A stretch of DNA of 63,143 nucleotides, filler included, from Dugesia japonica (lineage: Eukaryota), in the NCBI GenBank assembly GCA_001938525.1. It is 6 parts of 6 records of this genome, joined end to end, with 100 filler letters (N's around TTAATTAATTAA, not from the genome) between each part and the next. Parts side by side here need not be neighbours in the genome. Positions count along the whole stretch, not along the records: positions 28,308 to 41,275 come from MQRL01483210.1; positions 41,376 to 50,483 come from MQRL01580565.1; 4 more parts are not named here. One strand, written 5' to 3'. Shown here one piece after another: positions 28,308-43,800 of the stretch. Made by a program: the position numbers and the translations under genes. A model generated the notes under the pieces. That model searched no databases. It was not told the origin of the DNA and was given only the letters and a program-made list of their open reading frames with translations. How positions within the stretch are numbered: the first letter of the stretch is position 1; each line of letters opens with the position of its first letter.

Positions 28308-28376
<69 letters not shown>
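28308..28376. repeat. (TTA)n microsatellite
   Basis: Perfect trinucleotide run at the contig start. Similar (AAT)n runs at ~30604-30630 and ~44244-44296. Confidence 0.95.
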
Positions 28377-28998
28377 GTGCAATTAAGTTCATTTAATGCT
28401 CTAAAATTAACCATAATTTGTGCCGGTCAAAGTGGCGACAATACGAGAACATTTGCATTTTCATTAATAAACAATGTTGCTATGTCCAAGGCAATAATGT
28501 CATTCATATTCAACTTTCAGGTGGATTATTAAGTCTGTAAATATTTACAAATGGAATACTTATAAAAATACTTAAATGAACATGGTGACATCCGATACTA
28601 AAAAACGAAACGACTCGTATCTATGCTCGATATGTGATCCTGGACAAATAATGAAAGATGATGGTTAAAAATACAAGTGCTCTTTAATTTTTAGCTTTAA
28701 CGGTAATTCATCTAATAAAATAAAGTACACAAAAAAATAAATATTATTCATTTGAACTCGATTGATTTCAAACGTTTTGGTTGCTGTATTGATAATTTCA
28801 AATTTTCAATTAGAAAATTTTTACTAGTTAGTTAATTTTCTGATTGATTAAATAAATTGATTGATATTTTCTTAATCATTTTTATTTGAAAACTGTCAAT
28901 TATAATCGATACTATTTACAATTTGAAAGTAGTTTTTTACTATTGTATTCTGTGAAACATTGTAATTGGATACTTGTGATATTTATCATACGTTATTA

Positions 28999-29614
28999 TT
29001 AATTGATATTATTTTCAAATCGGTGAAAATTGTTTTTTTCTTAAAGATATGTATTTATTTAGAAACAAATTGATTTTGATAAAATTATTGATTAATAATA
29101 ATATTTAATACCGCTTTCGTCCTTGATTTGAAATTGAAAATCATCGGATTTGATTTTACAATTTTCCAATTGATTTGAATTATTATTTGATGTATTGAAA
29201 TTGATTTTTGGAGCAAATGAAATCGGGAAATTCGGTAATCCGTTGAGTTTATTTTGAGAATCGGAATCTGTAAATATAATTGTTTAATAATATTATTATT
29301 GAATTTACAGATTTTTGCAATTAACTTGTTTTACTGTTGATCATATCTTTCATGAAATACTGAGGAATGGCTTGATTGATCCAATCCAATGTTGATGATT
29401 GGAGAAATGCTGCATTATTTGGAAATCGTAAAGAAGAAATAAAGTTTTGTTCGGAATTAACAATACGAGGCAATCGATATCGAGAAAAACCGACCAAATT
29501 GTTGAACATTGCAGGAAATCCTGGAACGAATGGTTCATAACAATTCGATGTTCGAGTTGAATTTGTCGGTGATGGTAATTGTCCGATATATTTGTTTTCA
29601 ATTGATAAATCCAT
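28999..29614 (-). CDS. Putative 3-exon host gene of unknown function (exons ~29614-29335/29326, 29267-29112, 29039-28999)
   Basis: The 97-aa ORF continues in phase through GT-AG introns of ~60-70 bp (NSDSQNKLNGLPNFPISFAPK...; EKNNFHRFENNIN*). No recognisable domain. Confidence 0.45.
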
Positions 29615-31118
29615 TTGTAATCATGAGATAATAAATAAATCAAAGTTAATTTCAATAATTAGCATTCATTTTATTATTAAACACAAACCAATCACATTTG
29701 ACTTGTTAAAATTATCAGACAATTAAAAACGCTCTCGATTTTTATTGGTTAATGTTTTATTTCTCTGAGATGTTATCGCATGTAAATTGTTGTTTTTATG
29801 TTTGCTTGTTAGTTTGTGTTTCGAAACTACTCTAATTCCTCAAAATAAATAATCTCACATTTTTTTGTTAATTTTTATAATTCAGTATTTTTATGTTTAT
29901 ATTTGTTTGCTGCACCCATTATCAATTCGATTTGATTTTAGTTTTGTTACATTATATTTGAGTATTTTTCACTGTTAGTTTAATTATCACATTAATCAAT
30001 GAAATTTAACTATGTAAATAAATGTGTAAATTTGTTTTGAATTTTCATTGATAATGTAACAGATTTTTTCCAAAAAATTAGTTATAATATTTACAAAGTT
30101 TAAATTAAAATTAAAAAAATATTTCAGTAAAGAATGAATTTATTAAACTTTATTATATTNNNNNNNNNNNNNNNNNNNNNTTATTAATATTTGCAAATCA
30201 AAGGAGACTTTTCAAAGCTGAATTTTTCCATACACTAAAGAGAATAATCTTTATTTAAAATGACAATCAATTTACTGTCATCATTAACCAGTTACCAGTG
30301 TCCACTTCAGAACTTTTAGCGTTTTTTGTATTACACCAAATCGTTAATTTTGAAAAGAAAATTCATAGTAATTATATACAAAACTTTACACCATATTTAA
30401 ATTTTAATTTAAAACTAAATTTAGGATCTTTTTATTAGAAAATGTTTCCATTAATAAAATTAAACAACAATGAACTCTTTGATCCATCTCTCTGTTACTG
30501 TTATACAGCTATTTTTGTTGTTTAAGGCAAAACTTTTCTATTGCTTAGAGCACTGAATTGTCGACAACTTTGGATACGTTTGAAGTGTAAAAAATAATTT
30601 CTTTAATAATAATAATAATAATAATAATAAATCTTCGGAATATTGGACAAATCTCTTCACCGTCGAACTAAATGAAAAATATCCTACAAAGCAAAACAAA
30701 TTAATCAACAAATAATTAAATTATACAGAAATACTACCTATTTTTCCAGAAGGTTTACAGCAATTTGTGGCAAATTGTTGGAATTTTCGTCCAAAAACAG
30801 CCAATGGAATATCGATCTGAAAAGAAAATTAGTATAAAAAGGACAAAAAACATACGAAATTTACCCTTAACAATCTTGTCATTTGAGATAACAATCCAAT
30901 CATTGAAATAAATTGTTATCCAAGTAGAAGAAACATCGATGGAGCACAGAAAACGAGGCAGACCACGTGTCGAAACCAGTTATGATCAAAACGGAACACA
31001 AATTAAACCGACAGAATATCAACTCAAAACAAAATAATTAGAAGCCAAAACATCTCACCTGAACAGATTATCACAATAATTGGGTCAACAATCAAAATAC
31101 AAACATGTCAACGGATCA

Positions 31119-31510
31119 TTATCGACTAATAAAATTGGAAAAGATCTCACCAAAATACTTTGTCCAGAAAAACGATCTTGAACCGGCAAATTAGAAACAC
31201 CTTCTGAAGTAGAAAATTTATCACAAGTAATTAAACCGATTTTAATAAAAATACCATCGACGAAATAAAGATGTGCTATTAAACCACGAGTAGAGAATGA
31301 AAGTGTTGTATGCGAGTTATGGCGGGTTGGAATTACAAAAGGCAGAGCAGTAACCATAGCGTTTCTACTTCACCAGGCTATATACACATTGTAAAAAGAT
31401 AAACCAGCCAAATTCCCAGATGGAGGACAGTTCCGCATGACAGGAATTATATAGAGAACAATTGAACCATGGATTCATCAACAGGGTGGATTGTCAGCAT
31501 TCATTAAATC
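31119..31510 (+). pseudogene. Bcl-2-family-like domain (BH1 and BH2 motifs)
   Basis: One frame with in-frame stops. ESVVCELWRVGITKGRAVTIAFLL (31299-31370) versus Bcl-xL BH1 EQVVNELFRDGVNWGRIVAFF. RTIEPWIHQQGGLSAFIK (31455-31508) versus BH2 HLEPWIQENGGWDTFV. Confidence 0.7.
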
Positions 31511-31634
31511 AATGTTACCACAGAATTGTAATCAAACAGACCTTTCAGCGAAAGTAAAAAGAGTGTTAAAAAATTTGTTAAAAAGTATTACAGGTTCAAT
31601 GTCATAAAAACGAGGTAGATCAAATACAGGATCT

Positions 31635-33600
31635 ATGTTGCCGATTTTAATCATGCTAATGTTGTTAATATTACCAGGGACACAATGAATGGTAGCGTTC
31701 GATGGCGATGAGATGGACTTTGGAGAGAAAGTTTACTCCTTAGTAGATACAGAAGAGTGTTCTGATGCGAACCCAGAACAGTTTGAGTCTATAAAAACTA
31801 TTCGGTCTATCAAATATATCAGGAATGCGATTATTATCAAGCTATGGTAGAAGAGTGTATAGTAACAGTAGCCACCTTCGTATTTAATTGTGGATATAAA
31901 AGTTGGTAATCTGTAATTGATCCAGGATTAAAAAAGAAACCAGTATTATTAACTAGACAAAAATGCAAGCAAGGATTTGTGTTTCTAAAGATAGACTTAA
32001 AAACAGGCGTCACGGTGAAAACTAAAAGGGATTTGTAACTAGTCAAAAGTTAATCACAGTTGAATCAATATCACCAGTAGACAACGAGTATTATATACGA
32101 TACGGATTCATATACGATAGATGGTATAGTAGCAAAAAATGTGGTAGTAATAGAAAGTTACACTGTGGAATTAAAAGAATTTAAAGCACTATTCGATGTA
32201 GATGGCTTAACAATGAAAACTCAACCAGCGTGTAGAGCGTCAGACAAATCATGTAGTTCAGGAATATCGACACTTGTATACGATGTATAGCTAAAAAAAT
32301 GTAAAATGATCTTTTTAAAGAAGTTAATATTCAACGAATATCAAGGAAAGCGTTATCAGGAACCAACAGAAAATTTAGAATCGTTTACTGAGAGTAAAAA
32401 AGCAGGTAAAGCCGCCGAGGAAGGACCACAAGGATTAGAAATGAAATGGATGGACACACTAATTTTATTGATTTTAGTTAGCAAAAAAGATGGAATCAGA
32501 TTAATAAAAAATAAAGCAATATAAAAATGGGAAGGCATCGTATATAAAACAAATTATAAAGGCCTACATATCTTGGAACGAAAGTTAGCAGGAGCACAGC
32601 ATATCATTGGGAACGAAGATATAAAACTACATCTGTATATTAATAATAAAATGGATTTCCTGTATCACAGAGACAAGGCTCTGTAGAAAAGATGTATCAC
32701 GATTTGGTACATAATGACTGTATATTAAATCAAGAATTGTTAAAAACAAAACTATCAATAGCAATAAAAAATCCTGATAATGTAGCACCACTACTTCCTT
32801 TCGGTAAAGGACAATTTGCCAGAAAAGTGGGAGAAGTCATGTACATTTATCCGTGCAAAGAAATGTCAGCCATAATGACTCCAAGACCGAAAGACAGAGA
32901 AACATGTTATAACGAACTAGAAAATTGGTATATAAACAAAACAAGATACGTGCAACCTGTCACAAGAATAATATCACCGATGGACTATATTCCAAATCAA
33001 ATAAACTAATTTAATATTTTAGGACCAATGTATGTAATGCCAAATGAAAAATGAATCAGATTTCAGTATAGATCCACATGGGATCCGAAACCTCAAAAAT
33101 TTCTCTTTGATCAAATTGAACGGCGGGGAAAGATTTGAATCTCTAAACGTAGCAGAAAATGGAATTTATAGCTCGGACGATTTAGCCAGAGCTCGTGAGC
33201 ATATGCTCTTCCCAGTAAAAAGAATGCAAATATTATCAAAAATAGTACAGATAGCTAACGGAACGTTATGCAATAGAAGACCTAATTACGATCTATTATT
33301 ATCACCAGATCACTTTCAACAAGCAACTCACAACGTTATGAAAAAGTTGTGGGATAAATTCATAATATTTGGCTAAGTAATGGTAGGGTTATTAAGAATT
33401 ATATTAATTATATATATCGTGAAAGTAGTCATCACACAAATGTTTGCTTGTTTCGATATATACGGGAGAGAAAAACGAATAAATTAGAAATTAATGACAG
33501 GAATATTTCCGTTCTGAGCAAAGACAGTTGTACTAAACAGCCACACAAAAGATATCTATCAAATAAAGAAATTCCTCAAGAAAATGAGTAAAAGACATGG
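31635..33600 (+). pseudogene. env: Chuvirus-like (class III, gB-related) envelope glycoprotein
   Basis: Signal peptide MLPILIMLMLLILPG, then AFD..YSLVDTEEC, FNCGYKSW, MYHDLVHNDCILNQELLKTKLSIAIKNPD, GEVMYIYPC, CYNEL..PVTRII, GIYSSDDLARAREHMLFP and a TM helix at ~33378-33450. Collinear with chuviral glycoprotein motifs. Confidence 0.82.
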
Positions 33601-34310
33601 AACAGATCAGGAAATTGGAGCACAAATCAGACAACTATGCATCGAATATCATACTTAAAATCACTACAAAATCAGCTACAACTAAAATGGAATGATATTA
33701 CCAGCAGTGAAAGCAATGAATCGGAAGGAAATATTTAATCAACAAGTTATTACAGAGAAAAAGCTCCAGATTACGATGAAGTTGTACGAAAAGACAGATA
33801 ACAAGAGAAAAGAAAAGCCAAAAGGAAATAAAAATTAACAAAGTTGAAAAATCATTCAAAGCCATATATCAAAGAAATGCACAAACATACACAAAAAGCA
33901 TTCAAAGCCATATATCAAAGAAATGTACAAACATAAAATCTAGGAAATCCGCAAGTAACCAATGCATGGGTAATATGTAATGACGGATTATATTATCCAA
34001 TGGAAGATCCAACACAACTGAGACGAATACCTAGATTATATGATTTTTTAAATCTACCACTATACCCAAATTGGACTATGCCAAGAATGCATTATCACCA
34101 GGTCAAACAATATAGCAACCAATAAATTTACCAATGCCACAGAAAATGGAACCAATAGTACAGCGAAACATTATGAGCTCAAGAAATTCCATGATACTAC
34201 AAGACAATACACAATCACCAGTACGAAACCGACAGCCACTAACAATGCAGAGCAGTCAAGAGTTAGAAGCAAAAACAGTCTGTACAGGAACAACAGCAGA
34301 AGGAAGTGCT

Positions 34311-34630
34311 TTACTAATGAAAGTAAAATTTAATGACATAGAACTAACATAGCCGATCAACACAGCAGCAAGTATATCGATGATACATCCATATGCACTC
34401 CCACTACAGACACACGGACCAATGCAAGGAACGAAATTTAGGATCAGTAGTCTGGACGGATGAGTTATCTAACCGCTCGGACAGATAAACTGCTCAATCC
34501 ACAGAGAAAACGCACCAAAAATTCGACACACATTAACTGTAATGGGTAGATTAGCCTACAGTTGTATCTTGGGATTGGATTTACTGCTGCAAGTGCTAGA
34601 TAACGGTATAATTAACTTAAATCAATTAGG
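34311..34630 (+). pseudogene. Retropepsin-like aspartic protease, copy 1
   Basis: LLMKVKFNDIELT*PINTAASISMI...ISSLDG...PLGQI...SCILGLDLL. Catalytic DTG reads NTA here. Confidence 0.7.
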
Positions 34631-34691
34631 AATATTCAAGGAATCGAATGAAAATAATAAACCACCAAAAGTTACTCAACAAGTTACACCT

Positions 34692-34853
34692 TGTGCAATA
34701 TGCGGAGTAAAAAGACATAACGCATTACAATGTCAATTGTCGAAATCTAAATGCCATTCCTGCGGAAGAATCGGTCACATAGAAAAAATATGCTTAGCAA
34801 AATCATCATGATGTTACAAGTGTGGAATAAGAGGTCATAAGGAAAAAGAATGT
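34692..34853 (+). pseudogene. Three CCHC zinc knuckles (nucleocapsid)
   Basis: CAICGVKRHNALQC, CHSCGRIGHIEKIC and CYKCGIRGHKEKEC, each C-x2-C-x4-H-x4-C. Confidence 0.92.
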
Positions 34854-35208
34854 TTCAGAAATGCAGTTCTAAGTCAACTTTGGCTTGGAGAATAAGCTAG
34901 TAGAGATAACTTCATGATAAACGAATCAACAGAAACTATAACAAAAGGATTCGAGGGAGAAAAATACCAACTGCAACTTACAACAGTGGTAAAATTCATG
35001 ATGGCATAAAAAAATGCCACCACCAATGTCAAATTTAGCCGGAAAATGGGAGAATTTCAAACTCAACAGAATACACGGAAATCCATTGAATGATTACGAG
35101 GATATCGACCAAATTCATTTAGAAGAATACGAAAATTTAGATAAAATACAAGCAGGCCGAGGCATCAAAGAGAAAGTCTTTTATGCATTCCGTCCAGGCG
35201 GACCACGA

Positions 35209-38200
35209 TTTGGCATCAATATTAAATTAAATGGACAAAAAGTTAATTCACTTCTAGATACAAGATCAACTTTATCCGTAATAAATAATAGCTTATAACA
35301 GCTTATCCAAAGAACAACGAAAAGGGATTCTTATCAACGATCAAACGGCTGTAGAGCAGTAGACGGAGTATCAGTCAATAAAATCGGAAAGTTACCCTAT
35401 GAAGTATTTTACAGGAGAAAAACAGTATTACACAATATGACAGTAATGGATGTAACTGAAACATATTTTGGGAACAGATATACTACCGCAACTATTAACG
35501 AACGGAATAATCAAATTATCAACGTTACAAGTCAAAGGTAAACGGAAAGGCCGATACTCAAAAAGCTATGAGGTGTTTAATTCCGATAGAATGATCATAC
35601 CGAGAAAAAGCCAAGTGTGCTATCTCGCAGACACAAAGACTCCACAGAGAGGAACAATGTTATTTGAATCATATGATGGGTTCTCACAGAAATATAAATT
35701 ACCAGCAGCAGGAGAACTTGTAACAGTAAAAGATGGCGGGAAAGTACCAGTCAATGTAGTAAATTTCTCAAGTAAAGATATTAGAATCCACCCAAATTCG
35801 AGACTAGAAACATTGACACCCATATTAAACTTCGTCCAGCAAGAAGAAAAGAAAACTACAGAAAGCGACTTGAAATCAAAGAGCACGGTAGAATTCCCTG
35901 CCATGGAAGATGATTTTAAAAGTTATATACCAGACAGTAACCCAACAGAAGTAGACAGATTATTCCAAGTCAATTCTGAAATCATATCAGCGGAACAAAA
36001 GAAACAGCTACTAAATCTTTTGGAAGAGTATAGAGATATATTTGCATGGACGGACGATGAATTAGGAGAATGTGGTGTCACAATGCATACGATTCCGATA
36101 ATCGATGAAGACCCAGTAAAATTAAAACCATATAGAATTGCACAATCTCAGAAAAAAATTTTTGATGCAGAAATTAAGAAAATGCTAGAAGCAAAAGTAA
36201 TTGAACCTAGCTGCTCACCTTGGCTATTCCCAGTAGTGTTGGTTAAAAAGAAAGATGGAGCAACAGGTTTCTGTATCGATTACAGACAGTTGAATGCAAA
36301 AACAAGAAAGGAAACATATCCTTTCCCTGAAATAAACGAATCATTACAGTTGTTGTACAGAGCAATAATATTCACAACACTCAATTTAAAAAGAGGATAT
36401 TGGCAACTAAAAATCAGTATTTACAGCAGGACAAGATTTATATCAATTTATTCGAATTCCATTCGGTTTAACTAACGCACCAGCATCATTTCAGAGGTAC
36501 ATGAATTTTGTCACACATGACATAGCACATTGTATGGTAAATACAAAGGATCTATTAATATTCTCAAGAGGATTTTCGAACAGTCTTTGTTAGACTTCAA
36601 CACTGGATTTTATAAGTTAAACCTACTAAGTGCGATTGGGCTAAAAACAAAGTCACGTTTTTAATACGTCAAATATCAAATAAGAGTAGATAACCAGACC
36701 TGAGGAATACAGAAAAGATAAAAGAATTTCCAGTGCCTAAATGTGTCAGAGAAATACTGGAATTTCTTGGATTAAGCAGATATTACAAGAAATTTATTAA
36801 AGGTTAAGCAACAATTTCAAAACCCATGCAAGATCTTGTAAAACAAGATACCACTTTTATATGGACAGAAGAACAACAAAAATCATTCGAATCTCTCATA
36901 GATCAATTACTAAAAGCACCAATTTTGGTTCATCCAAATTTCGAAAAACCATTCTTACTTGCAATTGATGCAAGCGGATACGCAGCAGGAACTGTATTAG
37001 GCCAATATGATGATCAAGGTCGAGAACACGTTGTAGCTTATTTTAGCAAAACATTTCAAGGAGCTTAGAAAAATTACAGTACAACAGAATAAGAAGCTCT
37101 CGCAATAGTAAAAGCAATTAAACATTTTAGACATCTATTCCTTGGACACGAAGTCATTATATTATCAGATCATCAACCACTAACTATGATTGGCCAGAAA
37201 CCATTACGAACTCTCAGACTTGCTAAATGGGCAATTAGTTTACAAGAATACATGCCGAAAATAAAATTCAGGATCGGCAAAGCCAATTCTAATGCAGATT
37301 GTTTATCGCGAGCAATATTTCCTGAACTTGTAAACAAACAAACGGAAGATATCTGTTTCTTATTATCAGAAGACATTGACTTTGAACAATTCAAGGAGAA
37401 ACAGAAGGAAGATTCAGAAGCCAAAATTATCCAGAAATATCTAATGGCAAAGCAAAATGATGCATTAAAATGTAACCCAGAAATGAGAAAACACTTACTG
37501 AAAAATGGATGTCGTTATACAATGAAAAAGGGATGGTTAATGACACAGAATGGAGAAAAAAGGCAACATTTATACCAAAATCGCACATAGAACGAATTTT
37601 ACAACAATGCCATAATGAAGTCCTTGGAGTACATATGTCAGCAAGAAAAACAGAAGCAAAATTAAGACACAAATACTATTGGCCAAGAATCGCTCAAGAT
37701 GTAAAAGATTGAATAGCACATTGTCAGATATGCGCTTCCAGAAGAGGAACAGGAGCTTCAGAAAAGGCACCTTTAAAACCAAAGCCAATACAAACTAAAC
37801 CGATGGAGATAATGGAGATGGACGTATGGCAGAGAATGTAATTTACCAATCGATTTGAAACACCAGTTTCCGATATTGTAATATATGGAACAAGAAAAGT
37901 ATGTCATTCGAATGAAATAGAAAATCCAAGAGATCTGGAATAAAGCAAGACTAAAATTCAAATATTATCAAGAAAGTGTCAAAGATTATCATGCCAAGAA
38001 AGCAAAACCCCATACGTTCAAGAAATGAGATAGAGTATTAATTAATACTCCGGAAATAGAAATCGGAACGATAGCAAAGTTAAAAAGGTTAGGCAAAGGA
38101 ATTTACAAAGTATTAGTGGTCACAGAAACCAATGTAAAAGTCAGATTAATTGGTAAAATACTCCAGAAACAACTATAGATTCATGTAAATCGATGAAATA
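35209..38200 (+). pseudogene. pol: pol: protease copy 2, dUTPase-like linker, RT, RNase H, internally deleted integrase
   Basis: LLDTRSTLSVI...ILGTDIL; PYRIAQ..SPWLFPVVLVKKKDGATGFCIDYRQLN; LAIDASGYAAGTVLGQ; HNEVLGVH..YYWPRI..CQIC. Confidence 0.92.
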
Positions 38201-39381
38201 AGGCAGCGTTACAAATAAAAAAGCATCATGGAAATACATAAAATAGAAGTACAAGAACTGGAAGGAACTGAACTAACTCAAGAGGCATCGAGTGACTCTG
38301 AAGATGGACAAAAATTGCCATATAAAGGATTAAAATGTCGACGAAAACCACTACCAATTACTATGAAATACGATAAAAAAATGTTTAAGAACTGTCTAGA
38401 AGGCACGACCGAAATCATACAATGATCTCTTAGTGTAAAAGGTGAGCTTGGAACACCCATTGCCACCAAAGAGAACCTCTAAGAAAACAAAGAACAAGAA
38501 AATCAAAGATCAAGAGACTCAACATGTGGCATCAAATGTAAAAGAAACGAAGATAATACGAACCGAAATTCGTAAATATAACGAAAAACATGCATTTGAA
38601 AAGCAAGACAAAAAGTGGGATCAACATAAAAAAGACTTAGAACTATTAGCTAATTATCCCGAAATCACACAAGAAAACGGTGCTTGTACAATATGTGATA
38701 ATAAATTTCTCGAAAATGTCCGAATATGACACGAATGTTGGATAACACTTTGTCATCACTGTATAGAAGAACCAATGAAACATTTAAAACGAGAATCTAG
38801 TCGTGCCTCAAAGTATTGGGCATCAACATATAGATGTTTTCTTACTAGAGTAGCAGGTGGATCAGCTTTGCCTCCGCAAACACGAGAGTTACTTAAAAAT
38901 TTCAGAAACAACAGATAACCAATTTCCAATGAATGGAAAAGAAAAAAATTGCCGCGGACGGTAAGAGTTTCAAAGTAGACCTAGGAGATTTAGTGGCAGT
39001 AATTAGCAGGAAAATTGTCAAATATGGAAAACTAAAATCCAGTTGAGCACAACAAGTACAAAAGATAGCGTATGCAAAGTGGGCAGAAAAGNAAGCACAA
39101 AGGATAGCGTATGCAAAGTTGGCAGAAAAGTAAAACAAGCAAAAGACAAGGAAAAACAAAAAAAGCAAATTCAAGATAAGAAAAATGAAATTCTGGACAC
39201 CCCACAATATTTAAACAAGGATTAAGTGGTAATAAAACAGCCAAGAAATAGAGAAACAACGGAAAATGTCTGCTCAGAAGGCATTTACTAATTAGATGGT
39301 CGGCCACAAAAGGAAAGACAAGAAGAGTCAAAACACAGATCAACAATAGTCAGTTTATTTGGCTCATACGCATCGGGAACA

Positions 39382-40830
39382 ATGGTAATCTTAATAATGT
39401 CTATACTAATCTTGCCAATAGCACAAGCAAAAGAACGCAAATTTACACCATGTAATTGCAAACAAACTATAAACGACAGCATCATAGACGATCTATGGAT
39501 AAGATTGTTGCTAGCCGGTATTGTCATATTTTATTGCGGACAACGATTATTAACTCTATTCATACCAATATTATCAGGCAAATGTACCAGTCAAAGTTGT
39601 GAGATAACAGAACATGTACATACAGAGCATTGTCTACTCATAGAGTCAGATGAAAGGATTATGGAGAATATTAGTTGAGATGCATTGTCAAGGGAAGAAA
39701 CAGCGACCAGAGAATTGTCCCTTAATAAAACCACAGAATTAAAATCAGCACTATCAACTGGAAAGTTCCAGTTCCAACAAAGAAAGACTAAATATAAAAT
39801 CACAAACTTCAGAGTCAATACAAATCGTAATAACCCAATAAGACGAATATAATTGGGATAACCACCAATTGTTTACTAGAGTGGCAAATACAACGAGTCC
39901 ACTGATGAGTTTGAAACCAGTATAATGACACTGAAGCGGAATATCCTAATAATGTATACTACCACAACCAAGCAGACATTTAGAATTTGAACATCCAATG
40001 GATGTTTAACGGCGGAAACAGTGATGGTCAAACAACAAATAAAATTTAATTGCAACAAAATATATGTGATGGTCATGAGTTTTTCAGGGCAAAAAATAAG
40101 CGTCGAACGATAACAAATGCAAGATACCAAACCACATATTATGGAACTAAAAAAGCAATCCATAACAATGAAAACGAAAATAAACACATTTATAAGACAT
40201 TCAAGCAAAATTGCGAAAATACAATGGACCAGTCTAGATGCACAAAATATGATAGTCGAACAAATCAACATTCTTAAACAATGGTTAAATCCAACGAACA
40301 GATTGGTAGTGGAACGCTCAGGATTTGAGAGAGGTAGTTTTAATAGAGAATTCGTATTATATAACAATATATTATTCGTACAGCGTGTTATGATGAAGAA
40401 CAGACGAATACTAACCCAACAAATAAAGTATAAAAAGATCTCATTCATAGACAAGATACCAACAACGAAAAAACTAATTACATAAAAAATAACAACAGCA
40501 AAAGAAGCAGAAACAAAACAACCGGAACCACAAATAGAAGGAAGTAATGCGGTAACGCCAGAACAAAAAGCGTTTCTAGAACAAATAATAAGAAAGATAC
40601 ATAAACCAAACGCTACTACAGTTGCATTAATTTACAATTTATTGACATTGCTAAGCTTATTTTTATTAATCCCTATTAAAAATAAGCTCAGCAATGCCAA
40701 TAGATACACCAAAGGCAAAGAACTGGAAGACGAATGTTTTTTAACAGCAACAGCATCAATAGTTTTCTGCATAATCTGTATAATAGCAACAATACTAGTA
40801 GTCAAGCGACTCAGAAGGCAGTACAAAGGA
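39382..40830 (+). pseudogene. Second predicted membrane glycoprotein (env-like) downstream of integrase
   Basis: Signal peptide MVILIMSILILPIAQA, N-terminal CxC (FTPCNCKQ), scattered Cys, and C-terminal TM IVFCIICIIATILVV followed by KRLRR. Fragmented by stops and frameshifts. Confidence 0.5.
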
Positions 40831-43800
40831 CTAAGACTCCCTGTTGCAATGCGAAACCTAATAATAATTATCAACTACGCTTCAATAGGGCAGGAATCAG
40901 GTGATCAACCAACATTGGCGGACCACCGAATACACTTTCGCATGAATAAACTTCTATTGTACAGATGCAAAAAAAGAATATAAAATTTTAAAAATATAAA
41001 AGATTAGAAAAATTATCAGTATTAAATGCAGAAATATGATTGTATATGTCACTATATCAAAAAAGAAAATTCTAAATTGGAAAGTTAAAATCAAAGTATT
41101 GTCAGAAAAAGGAGTAAAATCAAACTCTGAATACGAAAAGTTTGGTTAATTAATTTAAATTAATTGGTTTATTAAAGTTAATTGGTTAATTTTAATTCTT
41201 ATTTTAAATATAAAATAAGAATTAAAATTAACCAATTAAAATTTAATAAAAATAAATTATTTCAAAAATTATTACNNNNNNNNNNNNNNNNNNNNNNNNN
41301 NNNNNNNNNNNNNNNNNNNTTAATTAATTAANNNNNNNNNNNNNNNNNNNNNNNNNNNNNNNNNNNNNNNNNNNNCAGTATAGATATACACATAACAAAG
41401 AACACGGGTCATATATTATATTATTTATATCGATTTGTGTATCCATTAATGAAATCAGTACATTTTTGTATGAAGTAGTTGTGTTTTAGTAAATTTAATA
41501 GGATATGAAGTATGAATATTTTCTAATGAAATTAAATTGGTATAATACGTATTGAGATTAAAATGCTTCATAATAAAATTATTGTATACTCATTCAAATA
41601 ATACATTTTTTTTATGTTTTAGTATAATTATTAAACTTTTTTTGTATAAAGCGTGTAAGACCTGTTGTGCCATCATGAAATAGATCTATTTTTGTATACA
41701 ATGTGGTTATATTTGTATGAAAGTTTGAATGTTTTATTAAAATCGATAAATTCATGTATATGCATTTTTATTGCATTTATTCATGAGGTGGCTTAAAGTT
41801 ATCATTAACAATGGCGATTACTTTTAACAATTTGTGTCACTTTTTAAAATAGATTTTGAAGTTAGCTGAAAAATTTTCATTTTTTATTTGTACACCTAAT
41901 ATTTTTCTAAAGAAAAGTAAATATCATTTTACATTAATAACATTTACATTTTGTTAAGCATATCAAAGAAAATTAAAAATTTTTTGTATCAATTTGTTCT
42001 TTGTGAAAAATTAGAAATTTCATTTAAAAATATTTTTAACATTGCAACATTAGAAAAAGCAACTTATGAATCAATCTAACCTTCATTTTATTGAGTAATA
42101 TCGAATAACACGTAATATAATTTTACTACAAGTACACTTAATGACGAATTTATTCCAAATTGTGAAAATTTCACTAGAAAGTTTTGCTATAAAACATAAA
42201 ATTTAATATTCTAAATATAAATAGACATTGATTAATTCGCTACTTTAATTCCAGTTTCATACGTAAAGATGCGATGCGTTTCTTGTATAAAATAATAAAA
42301 CAGAAATTTTTATCAATTTTTTTCAATCAAGAGTAAATTTATTTCTACAATATTTTTCTTACGATTTATATTTTAATTAAAAAATTGATTTGCAAAGTTT
42401 ATATTTGTAAATTAAATAACTTAATTATTACTAATTCAGACACAAATATGTTATTAACGTTGAATAGATTAGATTATTGAATTTTATATTTCAATTTGAT
42501 CAATAACGATAATTCTTGAGGGAATTCATACATTCATTTTTAAATATTATCAAATAATGATACAAACTAATTTCAGTGAAATTTTATTTATTTAATAAAA
42601 TCGATATTTTATAGCACATTTTAATGAAACTACGAGAATTTATTTTTTTCAAATTTATCGGTAAAAATTAATGTTAAATTTATTCGTGTATTGATATTTA
42701 CCGAATATTTTTAATATTATGAGACAGGAACTTTGGCAATATCAAAAATATAATAAGAATAAGAATATTAATTATAATAATAACAATACTAATAATAATA
42801 ATGATAATGTTGGAGTATGGGTAGTTATTTTAATAAACTGTATTCTGTTGATTGATAGACTGTCCTTGTGCATCTAGTCATGCCCGCTCACAATTTACCC
42901 GGACCTTATAAGACCAACTTCCGGTAACGTAAGTAACTTCTCATGGAAGTGCCGTTTTAAGTTCATTTGGTTTACTTTCATTTGATTTGGAGCTGTAGAA
43001 GCCCTACACTGATCAGTGTCACCAACCTTACGCCCACAAAGTAAAAAGAAATTTATAACATCATGAAATATTTTTTGAAGAAGCACTTTATTATATCTGG
43101 ATTATTCTGCATTACATCGTGCCCATTGAGGGAAAAGAAAATTGTTGCTAAATGAATCTTGATGGGATTGAATAACTTTTATAATCAGGTTCGATTGGGA
43201 TGCGCTTGTCGGTCATCACAGTGACATTAGAGCGATTGTTCAATGAATCATTCAGAGTAACTACTGATTATAATTGAGATCGTTTAACATCTTGTATCTG
43301 TAATCCTTATAAACGTTTCATAGATTGTGTTTACCGCATCTTAAGAGTAACCCTAGACATAAACCAATGAAAACTGCCTACAGATATTTAATGGAAAACA
43401 ATCTGCAGCCCTTGCTAAAAATAATGCGAGCATTCGTAGGAAACCATCTGCAACACTCATTTCAAATAAAATAAAATGCACATTCAATTAGAATAGGCTT
43501 CGAACAGATGTAGAAATATTTCATTGGAAACGAATCTTTATTTTGCCATTTATTTAGAACTGACATAGCAGCAATCTTCAAGTGATGATGGCCAATAAAT
43601 TTGATGTTCAATATGAATAAATATCGAGCCTAATCATTCTATGGAAACAAATATTTATTTGAAATTTATTTCAAATCCGATAGAGAATCAAGAGGGTTTA
43701 AGTTTGCAAATCAGTAAAATAAATCTTACCAAAATCAAAATTTTCGACAAGATGGCGAATTTTCTTGTTCAAAAATAATTTCTTATAAAATAATGAATTA

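What the first reader, a model, noticed from the sequence alone, without database searches (positions are those of the whole stretch)
30939..41000. Endogenous-virus-like gypsy element: Bcl-2-like domain fused to a chuvirus-type envelope placed 5' of pol
Seen: from ATG 30939, one reading frame broken only by point stops runs MEHRKRGRPR (AT-hook), a Bcl-2-like domain, an internal signal peptide (31635), then a glycoprotein. Protease, 3xCCHC, protease, RT, RNase H and integrase follow on the same strand in Ty3/gypsy order. Established: env normally lies 3' of pol, and captured chuviral glycoproteins are best known from insect BEL/Pao elements. Inference: this is a fossil of an enveloped, possibly infectious gypsy lineage that couples an apoptosis regulator to its fusion protein in one polyprotein. 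The ORF track misses it because the Bcl-2 part is split by stops. I recall giant planarian gypsy elements being reported with apoptosis-related cargo, so novelty needs a literature check.
Basis: partly seen in the sequence, partly recalled or inferred. Interest (0 to 1): 0.93.

Follow-up and report, generated by a model that had tools for sequence, protein, structure and literature searches.

The report
Dead Bcl-2–envelope gypsy retroelement copy
This is a decayed copy of a retrovirus-like gypsy element that carries an apoptosis-regulator-like domain fused to a chuvirus-type fusion glycoprotein upstream of its polymerase genes, a layout already published for planarian 'Burro' elements, so it is real but mostly not new.

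Summary
The observation largely holds. From about 30.9 to 41.0 kb the + strand carries, in order: an AT-hook, a Bcl-2-like stretch, a hydrophobic signal/anchor, a class III (chuvirus/gB-type) glycoprotein, a coding-like spacer, three CCHC knuckles, protease, RT, RNase H and integrase, then a roughly 2.8 kb tail of unknown content.

Every gene is broken, and the integrase catalytic core is missing. The glycoprotein also has frameshifts, not only stops.

Intact relatives from metagenome contigs join glycoprotein, proteases, RT, RNase H and integrase in single ORFs. Four of these ORFs also hold the Bcl-2-like domain directly before the glycoprotein. The linkage is therefore a family trait, not a nesting accident.

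The layout is already published:
- BCL2 then env then PR, in frame, in planarian Burro/GYPSM1 elements (PMC6431247).
- GAG-ENV-POL and ENV-GAG-POL gypsy elements with gB-type envelopes (PMC13524379).

One feature is unusual. The three CCHC knuckles lie after the envelope, whereas all seven relatives with knuckles have them before it. This is either a real ENV-GAG-POL-like variant or a junction of two related elements, and I could not settle which. No LTRs were seen and the host is unknown.

The parts
28308..30850 (.). AT-rich flank (about 23% GC). It holds (TTA)23 at 28308-28376, (TAA)9 at 30604-30630 and an N gap at 30160-30180. No gene was recognised.
30939..31690 (+). AT-hook, Bcl-2-like stretch (BH1-BH2-like part at about 31300-31545) and hydrophobic signal/anchor (about 31629-31673). 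Broken by 8 in-frame stops in 251 codons, with no frame change seen.
   Evidence: reading frame. (profile hit to Bcl-xL, E 3.8e-6). (L005 ORF aa 1325-1462 matches 31350-31775, E 2e-9). (P0156 aa 414-560, E 5e-15). (hydrophobicity). (counts).
31691..33620 (+). Class III, chuvirus/gB-type fusion glycoprotein (ectodomain, TM-like segment, short tail). Broken by 12 stops and 3 frame changes relative to the nearest relative.
   Evidence: PF24664, best E 5.7e-18. (134 homologues). (collinear with P0156, P0028, P0025 and others at 31-44% identity). (fold of relative P0025: gB, and chuvirus glycoproteins). (TM). (counts).
33621..34691 (+). Coding-like spacer with no recognisable domain. The first part stays open in the glycoprotein's own frame, then another frame leads into the knuckles. 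It is broken by stops and at least one frame change, and holds a 46-nt tandem duplication at 33847-33935.
   Evidence: 4 stops per 165 codons against 12.5 expected, P 0.0035; then 5 per 261 against 18. (no similarity, no Pfam hit)..
34692..34853 (+). Three CCHC zinc knuckles 20 codons apart (nucleocapsid-like).
   Evidence: strict motif, one frame, + strand only. (zf-CCHC, weak). (second copy L007 at 83% nt identity over 34464-35350).
35203..35451 (+). Retroviral-type aspartic protease. Broken by 1 stop and 1 frame change. No D-[ST]-G triplet is left.
   Evidence: RVP, weak. (P0156 PR aa 1493-1562, E 6e-7)..
35456..36241 (+). PR-RT linker specific to this clade, with faint likeness to spumavirus A9 protease. 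It is the only unbroken stretch.
   Evidence: P0156 aa 1585-1806, E 7.5e-47. (Spuma_A9PTase, weak, in the window and relatives)..
36242..36663 (+). Reverse transcriptase. Broken by 2 stops and 2 frame changes.
   Evidence: RVT_1. (RT homologues, including one named as 17.6-type pol). (RT-RH 54% identical to P0156).
36862..37251 (+). RNase H. There are 3 stops in the connection plus RNase H.
   Evidence: RT_RNaseH_2 at E 1.8e-22, and RT_RNaseH..
37267..38193 (+). Integrase. The zinc-binding and C-terminal parts are present. The catalytic core is missing through one internal deletion of roughly 140 codons. There are also 5 stops and 2 frame changes.
   Evidence: Integrase_H2C2, E 1.5e-13. (no match to the rve cores of P0028 or P0156)..
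38200..39290 (+). Tail, part a. Composition is element-like but there is no clear frame and no homologue. It holds a 39-nt tandem duplication at 39054-39130.
39292..40980 (+). Tail, part b: remnant of a reading frame of about 560 codons (7 stops against 42.5 expected). No homologue and no Pfam family.
   Evidence: (AF2 of the longest open stretch gave pLDDT 58, not usable).
41000..41275 (.). AT-rich 3' flank (20-25% GC), cut by the end of the piece.
   Evidence: (no significant likeness to the upstream flank).

Best explanation
The block from about 30.9 to 41.0 kb is one dead copy of an envelope-carrying Ty3/gypsy retroelement. It belongs to the clade that includes the published planarian Burro elements. 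I put the clade assignment at about 0.9 and the single-element reading at about 0.6.

Shown:
- Its parts are collinear with single ORFs of intact relatives.
- The order is AT-hook, Bcl-2-like domain, hydrophobic segment, class III glycoprotein with a TM, then PR, a clade-specific linker, RT, RNase H and IN.

Inferred, for how the intact form works:
- The polyprotein is made on the ER.
- The part before the hydrophobic segment, including the Bcl-2-like domain, stays in the cytosol. That segment acts both as the glycoprotein's signal and as the tail anchor that cellular Bcl-2 proteins need.
- The ectodomain goes into the lumen, and the TM brings the chain back to the cytosol for PR-RT-RH-IN. The protease domains then cut the pieces apart.
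- The Bcl-2-like part would hold off death of the producing cell, as Bcl-2 homologues of DNA viruses do. The glycoprotein would mediate membrane fusion.

In this lineage three nucleocapsid-type knuckles, and perhaps a gag, sit between env and PR. This copy itself does nothing. Every gene is broken and the integrase core is gone.
For: - Pfam domains on open stretches.
- Collinearity from 31.46 to 38.19 kb with P0156, P0028 and P0157.
- Ten or more relatives join the glycoprotein with PR, and often RT-RH-IN, in one ORF.
- The Bcl-2-like domain sits directly before the glycoprotein inside the intact ORFs P0156, P0095, P0023 and P0025.
- One relative, P0156, is nearest for glycoprotein, linker, RT-RH and IN alike.
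- The glycoprotein to RT-RH identity ratio is 0.65-0.77, within the 0.46-0.78 range of single-ORF relatives.
- Break density is similar in the env and pol halves: 17 in 2.17 kb against 16 in 2.97 kb.
- The spacer is coding-like and starts in the glycoprotein's frame.
- No LTR-like repeat was found.
- CCHC-to-PR contiguity is shared by a second copy.
- gB and chuvirus fold.
- Hydrophobic segments at both glycoprotein boundaries in 13 of 13 relatives.
- Published Burro layout.
Against: - In every relative that has CCHC knuckles, they lie before the glycoprotein. None of ten relatives has knuckles between the glycoprotein and PR.
- About 0.9 kb of the spacer matches nothing.
- No copy spanning env to CCHC was found.
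- No LTR, PBS or capsid domain was recognised.
- Only the BH1-BH2 half of the Bcl-2 fold is supported. The window's own stretches give no hit alone.
- The topology and anti-apoptotic role are inference only.
Confidence: 0.6

Rival explanations
1. Two related elements are joined head to tail. The first is a fragment of a Bcl-2-env-bearing element ending somewhere after its glycoprotein. The second is the 5'-truncated gag (knuckles), PR, RT, RH and IN of a canonical gag-pol member of the same clade.
For: - The knuckles lie before the glycoprotein in all relatives that have them.
- None of ten relatives has knuckles in the glycoprotein-to-PR spacer.
- The layout knuckles, PR, RT, RH, IN is the canonical gypsy order.
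- The best frame changes near the middle of the spacer.
- The second copy L007 confirms only CCHC to PR, not env to CCHC.
Against: - It needs the same orientation, a break just after the envelope, and loss of the LTR.
- No LTR-like repeat and no non-coding gap is seen.
- Both halves share the nearest relative and a normal identity ratio.
- Decay is similar in both halves.
- No continuation of the first element follows the second before the AT-rich flank at 41.0 kb.
Confidence: 0.3
2. The glycoprotein is a stand-alone endogenous chuvirus element that happens to lie next to an unrelated gypsy element.
For: Chuvirus-derived glycoprotein EVEs are often found beside LTR-element fragments in arthropods (PMC10084718).
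Against: - The nearest homologues of the window's glycoprotein are retroelement polyproteins, not the roughly 650-residue viral proteins.
- Relatives carry the glycoprotein and pol in one ORF.
- The glycoprotein and pol have congruent nearest relatives.
Confidence: 0.03
3. The Bcl-2-like stretch is a chance resemblance or a piece of a host Bcl-2 gene, not part of the element.
For: The window's own open stretches give no Pfam or PDB hit on their own. P0025 alone reaches only E 1e-3 in Pfam and E 0.01 in the PDB.
Against: - The domain, with its AT-hook about 115 residues before BH1, recurs at the same place before the glycoprotein in five relatives from four samples.
- As a profile it hits Bcl-xL at E 3.8e-6.
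- It shares strand, frame continuity and composition with the element.
- It is published for Burro.
Confidence: 0.04

Closest known systems
Burro / GYPSM1 giant gypsy elements of Schmidtea mediterranea and Dugesiidae (Jurka 2007 and Grohme 2018, as reviewed in PMC6431247)
   Same: A BCL2-like motif is followed by an env that resembles glycoproteins of arthropod and fish mononegaviruses, then PR-RT-RH-IN, all in one direction and in frame. Decaying fragments are reported in Dugesia japonica.
   Different: - Burro exceeds 30 kb. Its gag and three CCHC knuckles are at the N-terminus, and it has MATH, BIR, ankyrin and SUMO-like domains plus a dUTPase between PR and RT.
- Here the block is about 10 kb, the knuckles lie after env, and none of those extra domains was found.
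- No Burro sequence was available to compare, and the host is unknown.
GAG-ENV-POL gypsy 'errantiviruses' with HSV/gB-type ENV in Platyhelminthes, Nematoda and Bryozoa, and ENV-GAG-POL elements of oribatid mites (PMC13524379; Sacco 2022 as cited there)
   Same: A class III gB-type envelope lies upstream of pol in a Ty3/gypsy element. If the spacer plus knuckles is a gag, the order here is ENV-GAG-POL.
   Different: Those elements are described with separate ORFs, LTRs and multiple near-identical copies. No Bcl-2-like domain is mentioned. This copy is dead and no LTR was recognised.
Uncultured relatives found here: P0156 (JGI 3300033082), P0028, P0157, P0025, P0023 (ENA ERZ25039515), P0095 (ERZ5540424) and the L005 ORFs (ERZ28573565)
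   Same: The same domain chain. P0156 is 38% identical in the glycoprotein, 54% in RT-RH and 38% in IN. The AT-hook plus Bcl-2-like module occurs in five of them.
   Different: They are intact or nearly so. Knuckles, where present, lie before the glycoprotein. Several have two to four protease domains, ankyrin repeats, or a downstream RNase_T-type exonuclease ORF. Their hosts are unknown.
Mosquito BEL/Pao elements with a captured chuvirus glycoprotein ('Anakin', PMC7642597)
   Same: The same glycoprotein family, captured by an LTR retroelement.
   Different: The pol there is BEL/Pao, not gypsy. No Bcl-2-like domain is reported.
Bcl-2 homologues of large DNA viruses (herpes-, pox-, adenoviruses; from general knowledge)
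   Same: A virus-borne Bcl-2-like protein that presumably delays death of the producing cell.
   Different: Those are separate genes of DNA viruses. Here the domain is part of a retroelement polyprotein and shares its membrane anchor with the envelope's signal segment (inference).

Membership tests
Ty3/gypsy (Metaviridae) LTR retroelement | Pol order PR-RT-RNase H-IN, with gypsy-type RT_RNaseH_2 and Integrase_H2C2 domains | tested here: met
   (one RT homologue named 17.6-type pol). No BEL/Pao or copia domain was hit.
Ty3/gypsy (Metaviridae) LTR retroelement | Long terminal repeats at both ends | tested here: inconclusive
   No direct repeat was found, but only 275 nt lie beyond the 3' end of the block.
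Ty3/gypsy (Metaviridae) LTR retroelement | Gag with capsid and CCHC nucleocapsid | tested here: inconclusive
   Three knuckles are present. No capsid domain was detected.
Ty3/gypsy (Metaviridae) LTR retroelement | Primer binding site and polypurine tract | not tested
   No host tRNA set was available. No tRNA gene lies in the piece.
Burro/GYPSM1 giant planarian gypsy | BCL2-like motif directly upstream of env, and env upstream of PR on the same strand | tested here: met
   Layout taken from PMC6431247.
Burro/GYPSM1 giant planarian gypsy | Giant size (internal region up to 25 kb, over 30 kb with LTRs) | tested here: not met
   The element-like block is about 10.2 kb between AT-rich flanks. Truncation cannot be excluded.
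Burro/GYPSM1 giant planarian gypsy | Gag with CCHC knuckles at the N-terminus, before the accessory domains and env | tested here: not met
   The knuckles lie after env, and nothing element-like lies before the AT-hook.
Burro/GYPSM1 giant planarian gypsy | Accessory MATH, BIR, ankyrin and SUMO-like domains, and a dUTPase between PR and RT | tested here: not met
   No such Pfam hit in the window. Decay could hide them.
Burro/GYPSM1 giant planarian gypsy | Sequence similarity to Burro reference sequences; host in Dugesiidae | not testable with these tools
   No Burro or planarian genome sequence was within reach. The source was not identified.
ENV-upstream-of-POL gB-type gypsy elements (PMC13524379) | Class III gB-type envelope | tested here: met
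   The model of relative P0025 (pLDDT 79.7) hits herpesvirus gB at E 1.5e-13. The window's glycoprotein is 36% identical to P0025.
ENV-upstream-of-POL gB-type gypsy elements (PMC13524379) | ENV within 2 kb upstream of POL on the same strand | tested here: met
   About 1.6 kb separates the glycoprotein end from PR.
ENV-upstream-of-POL gB-type gypsy elements (PMC13524379) | Uninterrupted ORFs and several near-identical copies | tested here: not met
   All genes are broken. Only one other copy was found, at 83% identity.
Monjiviricetes/Jingchuvirales fusion glycoprotein (PF24664) | Profile match above the curated cut-off | tested here: met
   64.7 and 43.3 bits against a cut-off of 27, on two open stretches. 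Named hits: Wenling fish chu-like virus and Freshwater turtle neural virus 1. BFVD top hits are chuviruses.
Bcl-2 family | BH1 and BH2 region | tested here: met
   Profile A1 against the PDB hits Bcl-xL residues 114-194 at E 3.8e-6. P0025 alone gives Pfam Bcl-2 at E 1e-3, below the cut-off.
Bcl-2 family | Complete helical bundle including the BH3/BH4 region | tested here: inconclusive
   The roughly 110 residues before BH1 match nothing. No permitted query held the whole domain for structure prediction. The N-terminus of the P0025 model has low confidence.
Bcl-2 family | C-terminal membrane anchor | tested here: met
   A hydrophobic 15-mer follows BH2 in the window and in all 13 relatives. Its double role as the envelope's signal is inferred.

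The most novel reading that the evidence does not exclude
This lineage has a genuine permutation of the Burro-type plan. The AT-hook, Bcl-2-like and envelope cassette leads, and a gag-like region ending in three nucleocapsid knuckles lies between env and PR. That is an ENV-GAG-POL order, so far reported only for mite elements, here combined with a Bcl-2-like domain.
Probability: 0.4. Interest if true: 0.5.

Novelty: new member of a known kind. Interest (0 to 1): 0.3.

Why it matters
The finding adds a decayed member, and a set of intact uncultured relatives, to a little-studied group of retroelements. These elements place a captured RNA-virus fusion glycoprotein, and in a subset a Bcl-2-like domain, inside the gag-pol polyprotein. 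The group bears on how retrotransposons acquire envelope genes and host-manipulating cargo.

The shared hydrophobic segment suggests a neat topological solution for an envelope embedded in a cytosolic polyprotein. The same segment would serve as tail anchor for the Bcl-2-like part and as signal for the glycoprotein.

The main layout is already in print, so the gain is incremental. Only the position of the knuckles might be new.

Tried and rejected
- **Pfam and PDB searches with the window's own Bcl-2-like stretches alone:** blank.
- **N-terminus of P0028:** no Bcl-2 likeness. P0156's region alone was also blank.
- **Protease before the knuckles:** not found.
- **Gag or capsid in the spacer:** not found.
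- **Tail at 38.2-41.0 kb:** no Pfam hit and no likeness to relatives' tails or neighbouring ORFs. AF2 of its longest open stretch gave pLDDT 58, so no fold search was run.
- **LTR search:** nothing above shuffles.
- **More copies of the family:** one 885-bp contig only. The searches were blank.
- **Source genome look-up by an exact ORF:** blank.
- **Grohme 2018:** could not be read, so it is cited only through PMC6431247.
- **Flanks and minus-strand ORFs:** nothing.
- **Chance juxtaposition with a chuvirus EVE:** rejected.

2. Scripts printed the bounds of stop-free stretches so that they could be used as query references. Note 1 repeats some of them, and my reasoning named a few stop places. 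These imply break positions. This report lists none.

Full report
**What is there**

The piece has AT-rich flanks (20-25% GC) at 28308 to about 30850 and from about 41000 onward. Between them lies a block of 33-36% GC with a strong A>T skew on the + strand. No direct repeat of LTR size occurs in the piece.

Pfam searches on stop-free stretches of the + strand gave these hits, in this order:
- PF24664 Monjiviricetes_fusion on three stretches (best E 5.7e-18, 64.7 bits against a cut-off of 27).
- zf-CCHC (weak).
- RVP (weak).
- RVT_1.
- RT_RNaseH_2 (E 1.8e-22) and RT_RNaseH.
- Integrase_H2C2 (E 1.5e-13).

Three strict C-X2-C-X4-H-X4-C knuckles lie at 34692-34853, 20 codons apart. They sit in one + frame, and there are none on the minus strand.

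**Relatives**

A full-library search with a 119-residue open stretch of the glycoprotein found 134 homologues. The best are long polyproteins, not the roughly 650-residue viral glycoproteins. Pfam annotation of them shows the following:
- P0028 (2855 aa): glycoprotein, two protease domains, RT, RNase H, integrase and a long tail in one ORF.
- P0156 (4099 aa, open at its 5' end), P0157 (4844 aa), P0027, P0036, P0033 and P0122: the same chain.
- P0037, P0032, P0036, P0024, P0027 and the ORFs upstream of the glycoprotein in L004 and L005: gag and/or CCHC before the glycoprotein.

The window is collinear with P0156, P0028 and P0157 from about 31.46 to 38.19 kb. P0156 is the nearest relative for every part: glycoprotein 38%, PR-RT linker 34%, RT-RNase H 54%, integrase 38%. 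Generic gypsy RT-RNase H reaches 31-39% over full length.

The ratio of glycoprotein identity to RT-RNase H identity between the window and the relatives is 0.65-0.77. This lies inside the range among single-ORF relatives, 0.46-0.78. Env and pol therefore belong to one clade at one depth.

**The Bcl-2-like domain**

Evidence from single sequences is weak:
- P0025 gives Pfam Bcl-2 at E 1e-3, below the cut-off.
- P0025 hits Bcl-xL in the PDB at E 0.01, with Bcl-xL or Bcl-2 in all 60 best hits.
- The L005 ORF hits the BH2 region at E about 0.4.
- The window's own stretches hit nothing.

Five relatives share the domain directly before the glycoprotein: the L005 ORF, P0156, P0095, P0023 and P0025. 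I aligned these with two open stretches of the window (A1). As a profile, the alignment hits Bcl-xL residues 114-194, which span BH1 to BH2, at E 3.8e-6. It matches 179 PDB sequences at E<=10, and the 60 best shown are all Bcl-xL or Bcl-2.

The window region is tied to these relatives:
- L005 ORF aa 1325-1462 match 31350-31775 at E 2e-9.
- P0156 aa 414-560 match 31461-31897 at E 5e-15.

An AT-hook lies about 115 residues before BH1 in the window and in L005. It is weakly detected in the ORF upstream of P0025. In those relatives the ORF continues far upstream, so the ATG at 30939 is probably internal and this copy is probably truncated at its 5' side. The N-terminal half of a Bcl-2 fold is not shown. 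No permitted query held the whole domain for structure prediction.

**The glycoprotein**

An AlphaFold model of relative P0025 was built with 68 aligned sequences. Its mean pLDDT is 79.7, and the ectodomain is above 90.
- It matches herpesvirus gB in the PDB at E 1.5e-13, probability 1.00, with 113 hits at E<=1e-3.
- It matches chuvirus glycoproteins in BFVD, led by Tacheng Tick Virus 4 at E 3e-44, followed by chu-related and chu-like viruses.
- Named sequence hits of the window's own stretch include Wenling fish chu-like virus.

All 13 relatives examined have a hydrophobic 15-mer at the N-terminal boundary of the glycoprotein and a TM near its C-terminal end. The window has both.

**State of the copy**

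Counts are relative to P0156.

| Part | Stops | Frame changes | Other |
|---|---|---|---|
| AT-hook / Bcl-2-like stretch | 8 | 0 | |
| Glycoprotein | 12 | 3 | |
| Protease | 1 | 1 | no D-[ST]-G triplet left |
| PR-RT linker | 0 | 0 | unbroken |
| RT | 2 | 2 | |
| Connection and RNase H | 3 | 0 | |
| Integrase | 5 | 2 | one internal deletion removes the catalytic core |

Break density is similar in the env half (17 in 2.17 kb) and the pol half (16 in 2.97 kb).

**The odd part**

Between the glycoprotein end and the protease lie 1.6 kb. About 0.9 kb of this matches nothing, and the three knuckles sit at its end. None of ten relatives has knuckles there. Every relative with knuckles has them before the glycoprotein.

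The spacer is coding-like throughout:
- In the glycoprotein's own frame it has 4 stops in 165 codons against 12.5 expected (P 0.0035).
- In another frame it then has 5 in 261 against 18 expected.

No LTR-like repeat links it to the flanks or the tail. A second copy of the family (L007, 885 bp, ENA ERZ27272684) aligns to 34464-35350 at 83% nt identity. The knuckle-to-protease contiguity is therefore a family trait. No copy spanning env to the knuckles could be found.

I therefore rate one element with a gag-like region between env and pol at about 0.6. I rate a junction of two related elements at about 0.3.

**The tail**

The stretch 39292-40980 is a clear reading-frame remnant, with 7 stops in 563 codons against 42.5 expected. 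It has no homologue and no usable model.

**Comparison with the literature**

- PMC6431247 describes Burro/GYPSM1 of Schmidtea mediterranea. It has a polyprotein with gag and three knuckles, accessory domains, a BCL2-like motif, then env with hits to mononegavirus glycoproteins, then PR-dUTPase-RT-RH-IN. [quoted passage not shown]
- PMC13524379 reports GAG-ENV-POL gypsy elements with gB-type envelopes in Platyhelminthes, Nematoda and Bryozoa. It also reports ENV-GAG-POL elements in oribatid mites, and chuvirus-like glycoproteins next to gypsy pol in 114 insect elements.

This copy fails several Burro features (size, knuckle position, accessory domains). It could not be compared with Burro sequences, and the host is unknown. 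I therefore file it as a new member of a known kind rather than as Burro itself.

**How it likely works in the intact form (inference)**

- The polyprotein is made on the ER, with the Bcl-2-like part on the cytosolic side.
- The hydrophobic segment anchors that part and also serves as the glycoprotein's signal.
- The ectodomain lies in the lumen, and the TM returns the chain to the cytosol for PR-RT-RH-IN.
- The protease domains cleave the pieces apart.
- The Bcl-2-like part delays cell death, and the glycoprotein fuses membranes.

None of this applies to the dead copy in the window.

Steps left out on purpose:
- A consensus or ancestral rebuild.
- A read-through joined across frameshifts.
- Fetching records of exogenous chuviruses.

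Slips: motif strings recalled from memory in my reasoning, and piece bounds printed and in note 1. Both are declared under Tried and rejected.

Noticed in passing
window 39292-40980 (+): Remnant of a reading frame of about 560 codons downstream of integrase, with 7 stops against 42.5 expected. It has no Pfam family and no likeness to the equally unannotated tails of relatives.
   Followed up: partly
window 33847-33935 and 39054-39130: Two short tandem duplications inside the element: 46-nt units at 95% identity, and 39-nt units at 92% identity. The second contains a single N at 39092.
   Followed up: no
window 28308-28376 and 30604-30630: (TTA)23 and (TAA)9 microsatellites in inverted orientation bracket about 2.2 kb of the AT-rich upstream flank. 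An N gap lies at 30160-30180.
   Followed up: no
window 40637-40705: Inverted repeat with 32-nt arms, 88% complementary and 5 nt apart, near the 3' end of the element-like block.
   Followed up: no
L001:9547-11622 and L004:1-2340: Relatives carry an ORF with an RNase_T (DEDDh exonuclease) domain next to the polyprotein. It lies downstream in L001, and a weaker hit lies in the first ORF of L004. This is possibly further accessory cargo of the clade.
   Followed up: partly
P0157, P0032, P0028, P0030 (relatives): Two to four aspartic-protease domains per polyprotein, including DDI-like ones. P0157 and the ORFs after the glycoprotein in L002 and L004 also have ankyrin repeats.
   Followed up: partly
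P0027 (NCBI HBK71150.1): A 2627-residue glycoprotein-PR-RT-RH-IN polyprotein is labelled in NCBI as a hypothetical protein of a Flavobacteriaceae MAG. This is probably a eukaryotic retroelement contig binned into a bacterial genome.
   Followed up: no
L001:50-701: Arrays of 32-nt and 60-nt tandem repeats fill the 755 bp upstream of the P0028 ORF.
   Followed up: no
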